Source: Girardia tigrina
Taxonomy: Eukaryota
Direction of reading: 5' to 3'
NCBI GenBank assembly: GCA_001938485.1
Contig: MQRK01217149.1
Location: 1-50,112, forward strand
Length of the DNA stretch: 50,112 bases
Under the pieces are notes generated by a model. It did no database searches. It saw only the letters and a program-made list of their open reading frames with translations, and had not been told where the DNA came from. Every line of letters begins with the position of its first letter. Positions within the stretch are counted from its first letter, which is position 1. This document shows, piece by piece, positions 42,754 through 44,192 of this stretch. Position numbers and translations under genes: made by a program.

Positions 42754-44192
42754 ATGATGATTATTAAAAAAGGTGATGGAGGAGACGTCTTTGATAGCGC
42801 GAAGCGCGTATCCAAAGGAGGTGACGTTCAACAATCTATGGGAAATTTTGCGAAATATATTCCTGGATTTATGAAAACGAAATATGGAGAACTGCATTTG
42901 CCGGGAAAAAATTATTGTGGTCCTCTAACAAGATTGGATATCCGATTAGATGAAAATGATCAACCAATCGGTGAAGATAATAAACCAGTAGACGGATTGG
43001 ATGAAGCCTGTTATAAACATGATATCGCTTACAGATCTGAAGATTTACGAGATCGTCATTTAGCTGATGTAAATCTTATTCATGATATCAATCAACTTCA
43101 AGATCTGACTTTACGTCAAAAATTTGAAAGATTTCTTATTAAAACAATTATGAAAGGTAAAATCGCATTTGGTGGGGAAATAGATAAAAAAATAGATAAT
43201 AAACAAATAGCTAAAGATCGAGAGAATCGAGATTTACTTAATTCTTCCTCTTCGAGAAAGCAATTAAGTAAAGAATTACATAAAGAACATAAAAGAAATA
43301 AAGACTTTCTCCGAATAAATGTTAAATCACTGAATCGGATTTGGTCAGCCGACTTGATAACTGTTGACGCGAAAGAGGATACTGAAAACGGAGTTGTTGC
43401 AACAACAATAACAAAATCAGGACAAACTCGTAAAATTTGGAAATATTATATTTTAACAGTTATAGATATTTATTCACGATATGGTTTCTTCCGTTTTTTA
43501 CCAAATAAAAAATCTGAATCAATAATCCAAGCTTTCATTTCAATTCTTACTGAATTAGGAAATACTGAATTACCGATTCCAAAATATTTATGGGTTGATC
43601 AAGGAGCTGAATTCACAAATAAAGAATTCGATAAAAAATTCTTAAAAGCCAATAATATTAAAATGTATTTCGTAAAGGAAAAACCTGTTTTTATTGAAAG
43701 ATTTAATCGAACATTGAAATCTGAAATCTATAAACTATTTACTGAGAAAGGGGAGAAAGTTATTAGTGAGTTGGAAATGCAAGAAATATTAGAAAATTAT
43801 AATAATAGTATTCATAGTTCTATTCGTCAAATTCCGCACGATGTAATGTTTAATAATGCTATTCCACAACCAAAACCTCAAAAATTACCAAAGAAAAAAG
43901 TTAAACCGAAATTCAAAGTCGGAGATCGAGTTCGGGTATTCGAAACAAAATTATTTAGCGGAGACAAACCTGAAGGCACTCGCAATAAAAACCAGGAACG
44001 GAAATTACAAACTTTTAAAAAAGGATATGAACCAAAGTGGACTCGAGAAATTTATGAAATCAGTAAAGTTTTGGATCATGAATATCCAGTGACTTATAAG
44101 TTGATAAATCCCGAAAAAAATAATAAAGAATATTCGGTCGGTTCTATGAAGCGGATTTACAGATTACGCGAATAGGTACAAATACAAAATAA
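42754..44192 (+). CDS. Phospholipase A2 (parvovirus VP1u-like)-integrase (rve DDE) fusion; frameshift in the last ~20 codons
   Basis: LHLPGKNYCGP..PVDGLDEACYKHDIAY..RHLAD, then in the same frame WSADL, LTVIDIYSRY, LWVDQGAEF, IERFNRTLK, YNNSIHSSI, KFKVGDRVR, FKKGYEPKWTREIY and PVTYKL. The shifted frame ends IFGRFYEADLQ..*(44192). The ORF track calls 42724-44175. Confidence 0.92.

What the first reader, a model, noticed from the sequence alone, without database searches (positions are those of the whole stretch)
42754..44192. Parvovirus-type phospholipase A2 fused in frame to the Polinton integrase, with a candidate protease site between them
Seen: one uninterrupted frame holds a PLA2 domain (YCGP Ca-loop, HD catalytic dyad in ACYKHDIAY, downstream D in RHLAD; ~42886-43100) and then a complete DDE integrase (ADL, VDQG, IER). 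IAFGG|E lies at the junction (43162-43179), and GDGG|D and SKGG|D lie in the leader. Established: parvoviral VP1u PLA2 mediates endosomal escape, adenain cleaves after xxGG, and PLA2-like genes occur in some adintoviruses. Inference: a virion-packaged polyprotein whose maturation releases a membrane-breaching PLA2 and a free integrase, coupling entry to integration. The Ca-loop reads GPLT rather than GPG, and no C-terminal chromodomain is visible. I cannot tell how common the fusion is.
Basis: partly seen in the sequence, partly recalled or inferred. Interest (0 to 1): 0.85.

Follow-up and report, generated by a model that had tools for sequence, protein, structure and literature searches.

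The report
Phospholipase–integrase fusion gene of a Polinton-like element
One intact gene in a virus-like element joins a parvovirus-type membrane-cutting enzyme to a retrovirus-type integrase; the join is real and is shared by well over a hundred related proteins, so it marks a widespread, apparently undescribed lineage and is not a one-off.

Summary
One uninterrupted ORF (ATG 42754, stop ends 44175, 473 aa) passes Pfam's curated thresholds for both the parvovirus-type PLA2 domain (PF08398) and the rve integrase core (PF00665). It lies between an A32-type packaging ATPase gene and a double-jelly-roll capsid gene.

The fusion is not rare. Both halves occur in 78 of the best 120 database clusters, always PLA2 first. 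In an alignment with 61 relatives, the PLA2 residues (G56, H89, D90, Y93, D105) and the integrase D200, D282 and E315 are invariant.

At the junction, G140 is invariant, and Gly follows at +1 or +2 in 61 of 62 proteins. This sits at the only low-confidence hinge between the two domains in the predicted structure. GG|X and GX|G are the sites cut by the mavirus virophage protease, whose virions hold the integrase and a cleaved lipase-like protein.

Most likely this is a virion-delivered precursor for entry plus integration, probably cut at the hinge. Packaging, cleavage and lipase activity are all inferred.

The protein has no HHCC N-terminal domain and no chromodomain. The element's protease call is weak. 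No paper in the searchable library describes the fusion. I rate it a new variant of a known kind, of moderate interest.

The parts
42754..44175 (+). PLA2-integrase fusion gene, 473 aa, intact (no stop, no frameshift)
   Evidence: start context AAAATG is shared with the neighbouring ORFs
42754..42825 (+). N-terminal leader (aa 1-24) with two GGDV motifs. Only the second (aa 22-25) is conserved in relatives. Disordered in the model.
42871..43173 (+). Parvovirus-type PLA2 domain (aa 40-140): Ca-loop aa 54-59, H89-D90 dyad, Y93, D105; three helices, pLDDT 89-97
43168..43179 (+). Hinge motif (aa 139-142): hydrophobic residue, invariant G140, then G-x (window) or x-G (most relatives). Candidate GG|X / GX|G protease site.
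   Evidence: PMC6048507
43174..43338 (+). Linker and short helical N-terminal extension of the integrase (aa 141-195). It has no Cys, so no HHCC domain. It holds a 22-aa window-specific insertion (aa 145-166).
43339..43863 (+). RNase H-fold integrase catalytic core (aa 196-370) with D200, D282 and E315
43903..44163 (+). C-terminal beta domain of the integrase (aa 384-470), SH3/chromo-barrel-like at moderate confidence; not a Pfam chromodomain
41766..42665 (+). A32/FtsK-type genome-packaging ATPase gene
   Evidence: PF04665, 36.4 bits, cut-off 22.8
44208..45638 (+). Double-jelly-roll major capsid protein gene
   Evidence: PF21738, 62.4 bits, cut-off 27
45694..46365 (+). Gly-rich ORF with a hydrophobic stretch bracketed by GG; 6 GG and 4 GxG motifs. 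Candidate multiply processed core or membrane-active precursor.
   Evidence: no Pfam hit
46424..49001 (+). Four further same-strand ORFs of unknown function (46424-46759, 46756-47154, 47163-48005, 48138-49001). The last holds a single N at 48507, left as it stands.
49004..49492 (+). Candidate adenain-like (clan CE, C5) cysteine protease gene; assignment tentative
   Evidence: PF00770, 16.2 bits, below cut-off 21.3; adenovirus protease, E 1.9, same region
49526..50112 (+). Open frame that runs off the end of the window, so the element continues beyond it

Best explanation
The gene encodes a two-enzyme structural precursor of a Polinton/MELD-type virus-like element.

Shown: an N-terminal parvovirus-type PLA2 domain and a retroviral-type DDE integrase (core plus C-terminal beta domain, no HHCC domain, no chromodomain) are translated as one protein. 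This architecture, its domain order and all catalytic residues are conserved across a large clade. The gene sits inside the virion-morphogenesis block, between the packaging ATPase and the capsid gene.

Inferred:
- The protein is packaged into particles.
- The PLA2 part breaches the endosomal membrane at entry, as parvoviral VP1u does.
- The integrase part then inserts the incoming genome.
- The two parts are separated, probably inside the particle, by the element's cysteine protease. The cut would fall at the conserved Gly motif in the flexible hinge just after the last PLA2 helix.
- The cut would leave an integrase whose N-terminus matches that of the stand-alone integrases of related elements.
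For: Domains: Pfam hits above the curated cut-offs. Foldseek matches the full model to PFV, STLV and RSV integrases at E 2e-11. The PLA2-domain model matches entomopoxvirus, densovirus and parvovirus PLA2-like domains with probability about 1.0 and cellular PLA2s with probability 0.8-0.87.

Conservation: 62 of 62 aligned proteins carry both domains. G56, D83, H89, D90, Y93, D105, D200, D282 and E315 are invariant. Both halves occur in 78 of 120 clusters and in 25 of 145 further 50%-identity representatives, with PLA2 N-terminal in 125 of 126. On a tree of the integrase part, the fusion state clusters: 22 changes against about 65 in shuffles.

Hinge: G140 in 62/62, a hydrophobic residue at 139 in 62/62, Gly at 141 or at 142 (not both) in 60/62. 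Only three positions in the whole alignment hold a conserved GG/GxG, and one of them is the Ca-loop. The model drops to pLDDT<50 at aa 141-147, between two confident domains.

Analogue: the mavirus protease cuts at GG|X and GX|G, and mavirus virions hold the integrase and two fragments of a lipase-like protein (PMC6048507).

Context: the ATPase and capsid genes flank it, a candidate C5 protease lies downstream, and the next gene but one is rich in GG motifs. Stand-alone integrases begin at query aa 163-173. Many PLA2-only proteins end 0-8 residues after the G140 column.
Against: There is no direct evidence for packaging, cleavage or lipase activity.
- The residue four places before the proposed cut is K/R in 46 of 62 proteins, unlike the hydrophobic preference of adenain (own knowledge).
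- A Gly-x-Gly after a helix can simply be a structural cap or hinge.
- The linker of most relatives is short: median 11 residues between G140 and E174.
- The third Ca-loop glycine is Leu in the window (Gly in 34 of 62 relatives), so activity of this copy is not assured.
- The protease assignment is below Pfam's threshold.
- PLA2 proteins with other C-terminal partners lack the motif in a rough alignment.
- I did not read the gene neighbourhoods of relatives. The window holds only one copy, and its polymerase and termini are out of view.
Confidence: 0.55

Rival explanations
1. The fusion works uncleaved. The PLA2 domain serves as the N-terminal module of the integrase. The genome-bound integrase is thereby tethered to the membrane-penetrating activity, or the PLA2 acts on the nuclear envelope. 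The conserved Gly motif is only a flexible hinge.
For: The integrase has no HHCC N-terminal domain of its own. The linker in relatives is short, median 11 residues. The residue four places before the Gly motif is basic, not hydrophobic. The fusion is maintained over deep divergence, about 35-45% identity, which shows that co-translation is selected for.
Against: The GG-x versus G-x-G alternation at one invariant Gly is what a protease with the mavirus-type specificity would require. A plain hinge would not require it. Stand-alone integrases of the same family work without a PLA2 and start where the cut would leave the N-terminus. PLA2-only proteins end at this boundary.
Confidence: 0.27
2. The PLA2-like domain is catalytically inactive in this copy or lineage and serves as a structural or lipid-binding module. 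In that case the whole copy would be an endogenous relic without present function.
For: The third Ca-loop glycine is replaced by Leu in the window; only 4 of 62 proteins share the Leu. The window protein carries four insertions that are absent from nearly all or all 61 relatives. The element lies in a transposon-rich stretch.
Against: The His-Asp dyad, Tyr and distal Asp are invariant, the window included. The Ca-loop ligands of PLA2s are mostly backbone carbonyls (own knowledge). All nine ORFs of the block that were read are open. The insertions are in frame, and one is modelled as an extension of the core sheet.
Confidence: 0.12
3. The single frame is an artefact: two adjacent genes merged by an assembly or sequencing error in this window.
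For: The scaffold has several N runs. Only one copy can be seen.
Against: No N lies in the gene. At least 126 independent proteins from other sources have the same order and junction.
Confidence: 0.02

Closest known systems
PLA2X of adintoviruses and 'CAP' of insect Mavericks (PMC8502044, PMC5803895; first noted in PMC3671162)
   Same: A parvovirus-VP1-type PLA2 domain encoded in the virion-gene block of a Polinton/Maverick-type element, with an inferred role in entry.
   Different: There the PLA2 is a gene of its own, with a C-terminal pX-like part in PLA2X. Here its C-terminal partner is the integrase.
Parvovirus VP1 unique region PLA2 (Pfam PF08398)
   Same: Same Pfam family, His-Asp dyad, Tyr and distal Asp, helical fold, and tethering to another virion protein.
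   Different: It is tethered to an integrase, not to a capsid protein. The Ca-loop of this clade carries a near-invariant Thr, and in the window a Leu replaces the third Gly.
Mavirus virion proteins MV02 (integrase) and MV13 (lipase-like), and the mavirus protease (PMC6048507)
   Same: Integrase and a lipolytic protein are both carried in the particle. The lipolytic protein is cut in the particle. The protease cuts at GG|X and GX|G, the two motif forms seen at the hinge here.
   Different: In mavirus these are two separate genes, and the lipase belongs to another family (alpha/beta hydrolase). Nothing has been measured for the present family.
Retroviral Pol polyprotein
   Same: A DDE integrase made as the C-terminal part of a virion-packaged precursor and released by the virus's own protease.
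   Different: A different protease class, a different N-terminal partner, and no HHCC domain here.
Polinton/MELD-virus integrases with a C-terminal chromodomain (for example the hit named Trichoplax MELD virus integrase)
   Same: Same integrase family, about 33-34% identity over core and C-terminal domain.
   Different: Those are stand-alone proteins of about 310 aa, mostly with a chromodomain. The window protein has PLA2 in front and no chromodomain.

Membership tests
Parvovirus-type PLA2 domain (Pfam PF08398) | Profile match above the curated threshold | tested here: met
   37.9 bits against cut-off 23.9, aa 46-133. No other PLA2 family of Pfam matched at E<=1.
Parvovirus-type PLA2 domain (Pfam PF08398) | Catalytic His-Asp dyad with downstream Tyr and distal Asp | tested here: met
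   H89, D90, Y93 and D105 are present and invariant in 62/62.
Parvovirus-type PLA2 domain (Pfam PF08398) | Ca2+-binding loop with its glycines | tested here: inconclusive
   Y54 and G56 are present. The third Gly is Leu in the window (Gly in 34 of 62 relatives). T59 is present in 59/62.
Parvovirus-type PLA2 domain (Pfam PF08398) | PLA2 fold | tested here: met
   The domain has pLDDT 89-97 in the full-length model. Foldseek probability is about 1.0 to viral PLA2-like domains and 0.8-0.87 to rice PLA2, at weak E-values.
Parvovirus-type PLA2 domain (Pfam PF08398) | Phospholipase activity | not testable with these tools
Retroviral-type integrase (rve, PF00665) | Profile match, D-D-E triad and RNase H fold | tested here: met
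   37.7 bits against cut-off 32.6. D200, D282 and E315 are invariant. PFV integrase matches at E 2e-11 by fold and E 0.003 by sequence.
Retroviral-type integrase (rve, PF00665) | N-terminal HHCC zinc-binding domain | tested here: not met
   There is no Cys between aa 141 and 195 and no Pfam hit. Stand-alone relatives lack it too.
Retroviral-type integrase (rve, PF00665) | C-terminal SH3-like beta domain | tested here: inconclusive
   Beta strands are modelled at aa 392-470 with pLDDT 50-83. There are weak chromo-barrel hits, E 0.2-0.4, and conserved columns K386 to G463.
Polinton/adintovirus integrase subtype | C-terminal chromodomain | tested here: not met
   The window protein has no PF00385 hit. 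Only 3 of 62 fusion relatives have one, and it maps beyond the end of the window protein.
Polinton/Maverick (Polintoviricetes-type) element | Double-jelly-roll capsid gene, A32-type ATPase and rve integrase | tested here: met
   PF21738 at 62 bits, PF04665 at 36 bits, PF00665 at 38 bits.
Polinton/Maverick (Polintoviricetes-type) element | Protein-primed family B DNA polymerase | not testable with these tools
   None is found in the window. The element runs off the window end.
Polinton/Maverick (Polintoviricetes-type) element | Adenain-like cysteine protease | tested here: inconclusive
   PF00770 scores 16.2 bits, below the 21.3 cut-off. Adenovirus protease matches at E 1.9 in the same region. 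Only five close homologues were found, none annotated.
Polinton/Maverick (Polintoviricetes-type) element | Terminal inverted repeats and target-site duplication | not testable with these tools
   The right end lies outside the window. No convincing long inverted repeat was found within 30-50 kb.
Adintovirus PLA2X | PLA2 domain followed by a pX-like C-terminal part, as a separate gene | tested here: not met
   The C-terminal partner is the integrase.
Precursors processed by virophage/adenovirus-type clan CE proteases | GG|X or GX|G site in an accessible segment | tested here: met
   G140 plus Gly at +1 or +2 in 61/62, inside a pLDDT<50 hinge. The motif definition comes from PMC6048507.
Precursors processed by virophage/adenovirus-type clan CE proteases | Observed cleavage | not testable with these tools
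   No protein-level data are at hand.

The most novel reading that the evidence does not exclude
A PLA2-integrase precursor with a protease-cut hinge defines a large, still unnamed lineage of Polinton-like viruses of aquatic eukaryotes, animals included. In that lineage the entry lipase has taken the place of the integrase's N-terminal domain, so that membrane breach and genome integration are delivered, dosed and timed as one virion component.
Probability: 0.2. Interest if true: 0.7.

Novelty: new variant of a known kind. Interest (0 to 1): 0.5.

Why it matters
PLA2 genes and integrase genes are each well known in Polintons, Mavericks and adintoviruses, but as separate genes.

A conserved fusion with an invariant hinge motif implies selection for making both from one translation product. 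If the protein is packaged, the integrase of these elements would travel in the particle, as it does in mavirus and retroviruses. That would speak for a truly viral, not merely transposon-like, life cycle.

The fusion is also a simple sequence marker for sorting a large set of unannotated metagenomic and endogenous elements. At present they are labelled, if at all, 'hypothetical protein' or 'transposase InsO family protein'.

Tried and rejected
- Sequence search of the PDB with the whole protein gave only weak integrase hits and very weak chromo-barrel hits. A profile of PLA2 domains gave only marginal hits, E about 0.1, to dependoparvovirus VP1 N-termini and snake or pancreatic PLA2 active-site helices. 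These are consistent but not decisive.
- The PLA2-domain-only model was mediocre (pLDDT 65). Its PDB fold hits are weak, so I rely more on the full-length model and the BFVD hits.
- The protease could not be firmed up.
- I looked for a second copy in the window (none), for terminal inverted repeats (none convincing), and for a shared upstream motif (only an A-rich AAAATG start context).
- I considered that the C-terminal beta domain was a hidden chromodomain. I rejected this because the relatives' chromodomain maps beyond the end of the window protein.
- I considered that the four window-specific insertions might be unspliced introns. I did not pursue it: no tool predicts introns here and relatives do not share them, so they are described as insertions only.
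- I considered a single origin of the fusion. The integrase tree shows strong clustering but not one clean clade, and the tree is rough.

Full report
**What is there**

The window is AT-rich (about 29% G+C) and transposon-rich. It holds DDE_3, RVT_1, RT_RNaseH, Integrase_H2C2 and gag-aspartyl-protease fragments, and several N runs that I left untouched.

From about 41.7 kb to the end of the window runs a block of same-strand open reading frames:
- an A32/FtsK-type packaging ATPase gene (41766-42665; PF04665, 36 bits);
- the gene of the finding (ATG 42754, stop ends 44175);
- a double-jelly-roll capsid gene (44208-45638; PF21738, 62 bits);
- five ORFs without family hits;
- a candidate adenain-like protease gene (49004-49492; PF00770, 16 bits, below its cut-off);
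- an open frame from 49526 that runs off the window.

No family B polymerase and no terminal repeats are in view, so the element is cut by the window. I cannot name the host.

**The observation**

The 473-aa frame is uninterrupted. It exceeds Pfam's curated thresholds for both Phospholip_A2_4 (aa 46-133, 37.9 bits) and rve (aa 194-306, 37.7 bits). Only the end coordinate is off, by 17 nt.

AlphaFold2, run with an alignment of 61 relatives, gives:
- a confident helical PLA2 domain (aa 40-140, pLDDT 89-97);
- a drop below 50 at aa 141-147;
- two linker helices;
- a confident RNase H-fold core (aa 196-370);
- a moderately confident C-terminal beta domain.

The full model matches PFV, STLV and RSV integrases at E about 1e-11. 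The PLA2-domain model matches entomopoxvirus, densovirus, parvovirus and baculovirus PLA2-like domains with probability about 1.0. It matches plant, fungal and bacterial PLA2s weakly.

The region before the core has no cysteine, so there is no HHCC domain. There is also no chromodomain. In the three relatives that have one, it maps beyond the end of the window protein.

**How common the fusion is**

A full-length search returned 372 proteins. By precomputed Pfam domains, 69 of the best 120 clusters carry both domains. By BLASTP against the two halves of the window protein, 78 of 120 do, as do 25 of 145 further 50%-identity representatives. PLA2 is N-terminal in 125 of 126.

All 62 aligned proteins rescanned positive for both families. 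Some add an N-terminal DUF5679 or a C-terminal chromodomain.

Almost all come from unnamed metagenome or read-archive assemblies. Some belong to clusters of up to 114 members on contigs of 20-83 kb, which looks like multi-copy endogenous elements. The only named one is a hypothetical protein of the stony coral Oculina patagonica.

Identity to the window protein over the full-length fusions is only 34-46%. PLA2-only fragments reach 73% and the protease relatives 83%.

On a rough neighbour-joining tree of the integrase part alone (195 proteins), the fused and unfused states cluster strongly: 22 changes against about 65 in shuffles. The window protein is sister to a clade that is 55/61 fused. The fusion is not one clean clade, however.

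**Conservation**

Invariant in 62/62:
- PLA2 domain: G56, D83, H89, D90, Y93, D105;
- hinge and linker: G140, E174;
- integrase triad: D200, D282, E315;
- several C-terminal residues.

The 'GPLT' loop is typical of the clade in its Thr (59/62). The Leu is unusual (4/62), and 34 of 62 proteins have Gly there.

The window protein has four in-frame insertions that nearly all or all relatives lack: aa 145-166, 215-230, 272-275 and 400-418.

**The junction**

Column 139 is hydrophobic in 62/62. G140 is invariant. Gly follows at 141 in 6 proteins (the window among them) or at 142 in 54. One protein has both and one has neither.

Across the whole alignment only three places hold a conserved GG/GxG: the leader (aa 22), the Ca-loop (aa 56) and this hinge. 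The hinge coincides with the only disordered stretch between the domains.

Born et al. (PMC6048507) showed three things for mavirus:
- its protease cuts at GG|X and at GX|G;
- native virions contain the integrase MV02;
- the lipase-like MV13 is present as two fragments around a GK|G site.

The two motif forms at the hinge are therefore what that class of protease recognises.

A cut there would leave an integrase that starts about where stand-alone integrases of the family start, at query aa 163-173. Many PLA2-only proteins end within 0-8 residues after the G140 column.

Against cleavage: the residue four places before the proposed cut is basic, not hydrophobic as adenain prefers (own knowledge). 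The linker of most relatives is short (median 11 residues). A Gly-rich helix cap would look similar.

**The leader**

Of the two GG|D motifs, only the second is conserved (G22 55/62, G23 50/62, D/E24 55/62, hydrophobic residue at 25 in 59/62). In 34 of 62 relatives only 1-9 residues precede it. Removal of a leader is therefore doubtful, and the role of this motif stays open.

**Mechanism**

Shown: a conserved, co-translated PLA2-integrase protein encoded in the morphogenesis block.

Inferred, with my estimates:
- it is packaged into particles (about 0.6-0.7);
- the PLA2 acts in membrane penetration at entry, as proposed for Polinton and PLV lipases (PMC4642659) and for adintovirus PLA2X (PMC8502044);
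- the integrase inserts the genome;
- the hinge is cut by the element's protease (about 0.45-0.5).

The main rival is an uncleaved fusion in which PLA2 replaces the missing N-terminal domain.

**Comparison and novelty**

PLA2 in Polintons has been noted since 2013 (PMC3671162), always as a gene of its own: 'CAP' in insect Mavericks (PMC5803895) and PLA2X in adintoviruses. [quoted passage not shown]

None mentioned a PLA2-integrase fusion. The library does not hold most subscription journals, so this is absence in what I could search, not proof.

The architecture is already visible in automatic domain annotation of public proteins. I therefore rate it a new variant of a known kind, with interest 0.5.

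I did not fetch DNA around any relative, whether by look-up, pattern or accession. At least one sits in an animal genome, another hit is named as an animal MELD virus, and I could not tell for the rest. Gene neighbourhoods of relatives are therefore unknown to me.

The genes of this block that I read have no breaks to count. Subsequences written to scratch were single, unjoined stretches used for scoring and for a tree.

Noticed in passing
window 45694-46365 (+): A Gly-rich 224-aa ORF just after the capsid gene. It has a hydrophobic stretch bracketed by GG dipeptides and 6 GG plus 4 GxG motifs. It looks like a multiply processed core or membrane-active precursor, a second candidate entry factor beside the PLA2. 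No Pfam hit.
   Followed up: partly
window 42754-42825 (+), aa 1-25 of the fusion protein: The GGDV motif occurs twice in the window's leader (aa 9-12 and 22-25). Only the second is conserved in relatives, where it often lies just 1-9 residues from the N-terminus. Its role is unexplained.
   Followed up: partly
proteins P0128, P0132, P0133, P0134, P0135 and others: More than a dozen PLA2-only relatives end 0-8 residues after the G140 column, five of them exactly 3 residues after. This suggests split-gene versions or an intron at the domain boundary in some hosts. It cannot be settled without their DNA, which I did not fetch.
   Followed up: no
proteins P0210, P0222, P0230, P0199: The same PLA2 module is joined to C-terminal regions of 120-300 aa that are not integrases and have no Pfam family hit above threshold. 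The PLA2 therefore has more than one fusion partner in this virus group.
   Followed up: partly
proteins P0072, P0162, P0131, P0185: Some relatives carry a 40-aa DUF5679 in front of the PLA2 domain, and a few carry a chromodomain behind the integrase, giving up to four modules in one protein.
   Followed up: partly
window 41163-41699 (-) and 40788-41159 (-): Two opposite-strand ORFs lie directly upstream of the ATPase gene. One is a Lys/Glu-rich coiled-coil protein with short tandem repeats. Whether they belong to the element is unknown.
   Followed up: no
window 41766-49004, the ATG of each ORF: Eight of the nine starts examined have a purine followed by AAAATG or AAATG just before the coding sequence, seven of them AAAATG. 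The ninth (45694) was read with an offset, so its context was not seen. In DNA this AT-rich the significance is doubtful.
   Followed up: partly
window 34513-34844 and 31127-32398: A 93-nt inverted repeat pair (95% complementary, 146 nt apart) and a roughly 1.27-kb unit bounded by inverted repeats of about 40-70 nt. Both look like small DNA transposons or MITEs.
   Followed up: no
window 5460-5924, 10932-11830, 20403-20813, 27793-29399: Fragments of other mobile elements (DDE_3 transposase, RVT_1, RT_RNaseH, Integrase_H2C2, gag-aspartyl protease) and an AAA ATPase exon-like ORF. The Polinton-like element sits in a repeat-rich region.
   Followed up: partly
proteins P0284-P0288: The protease ORF has relatives at 73-83% identity on short metagenome contigs, and PLA2-only fragments reach 73%. 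Full-length fusion relatives are at most 46% identical to the window protein. Close kin of this element therefore exist in public data only as fragments.
   Followed up: no
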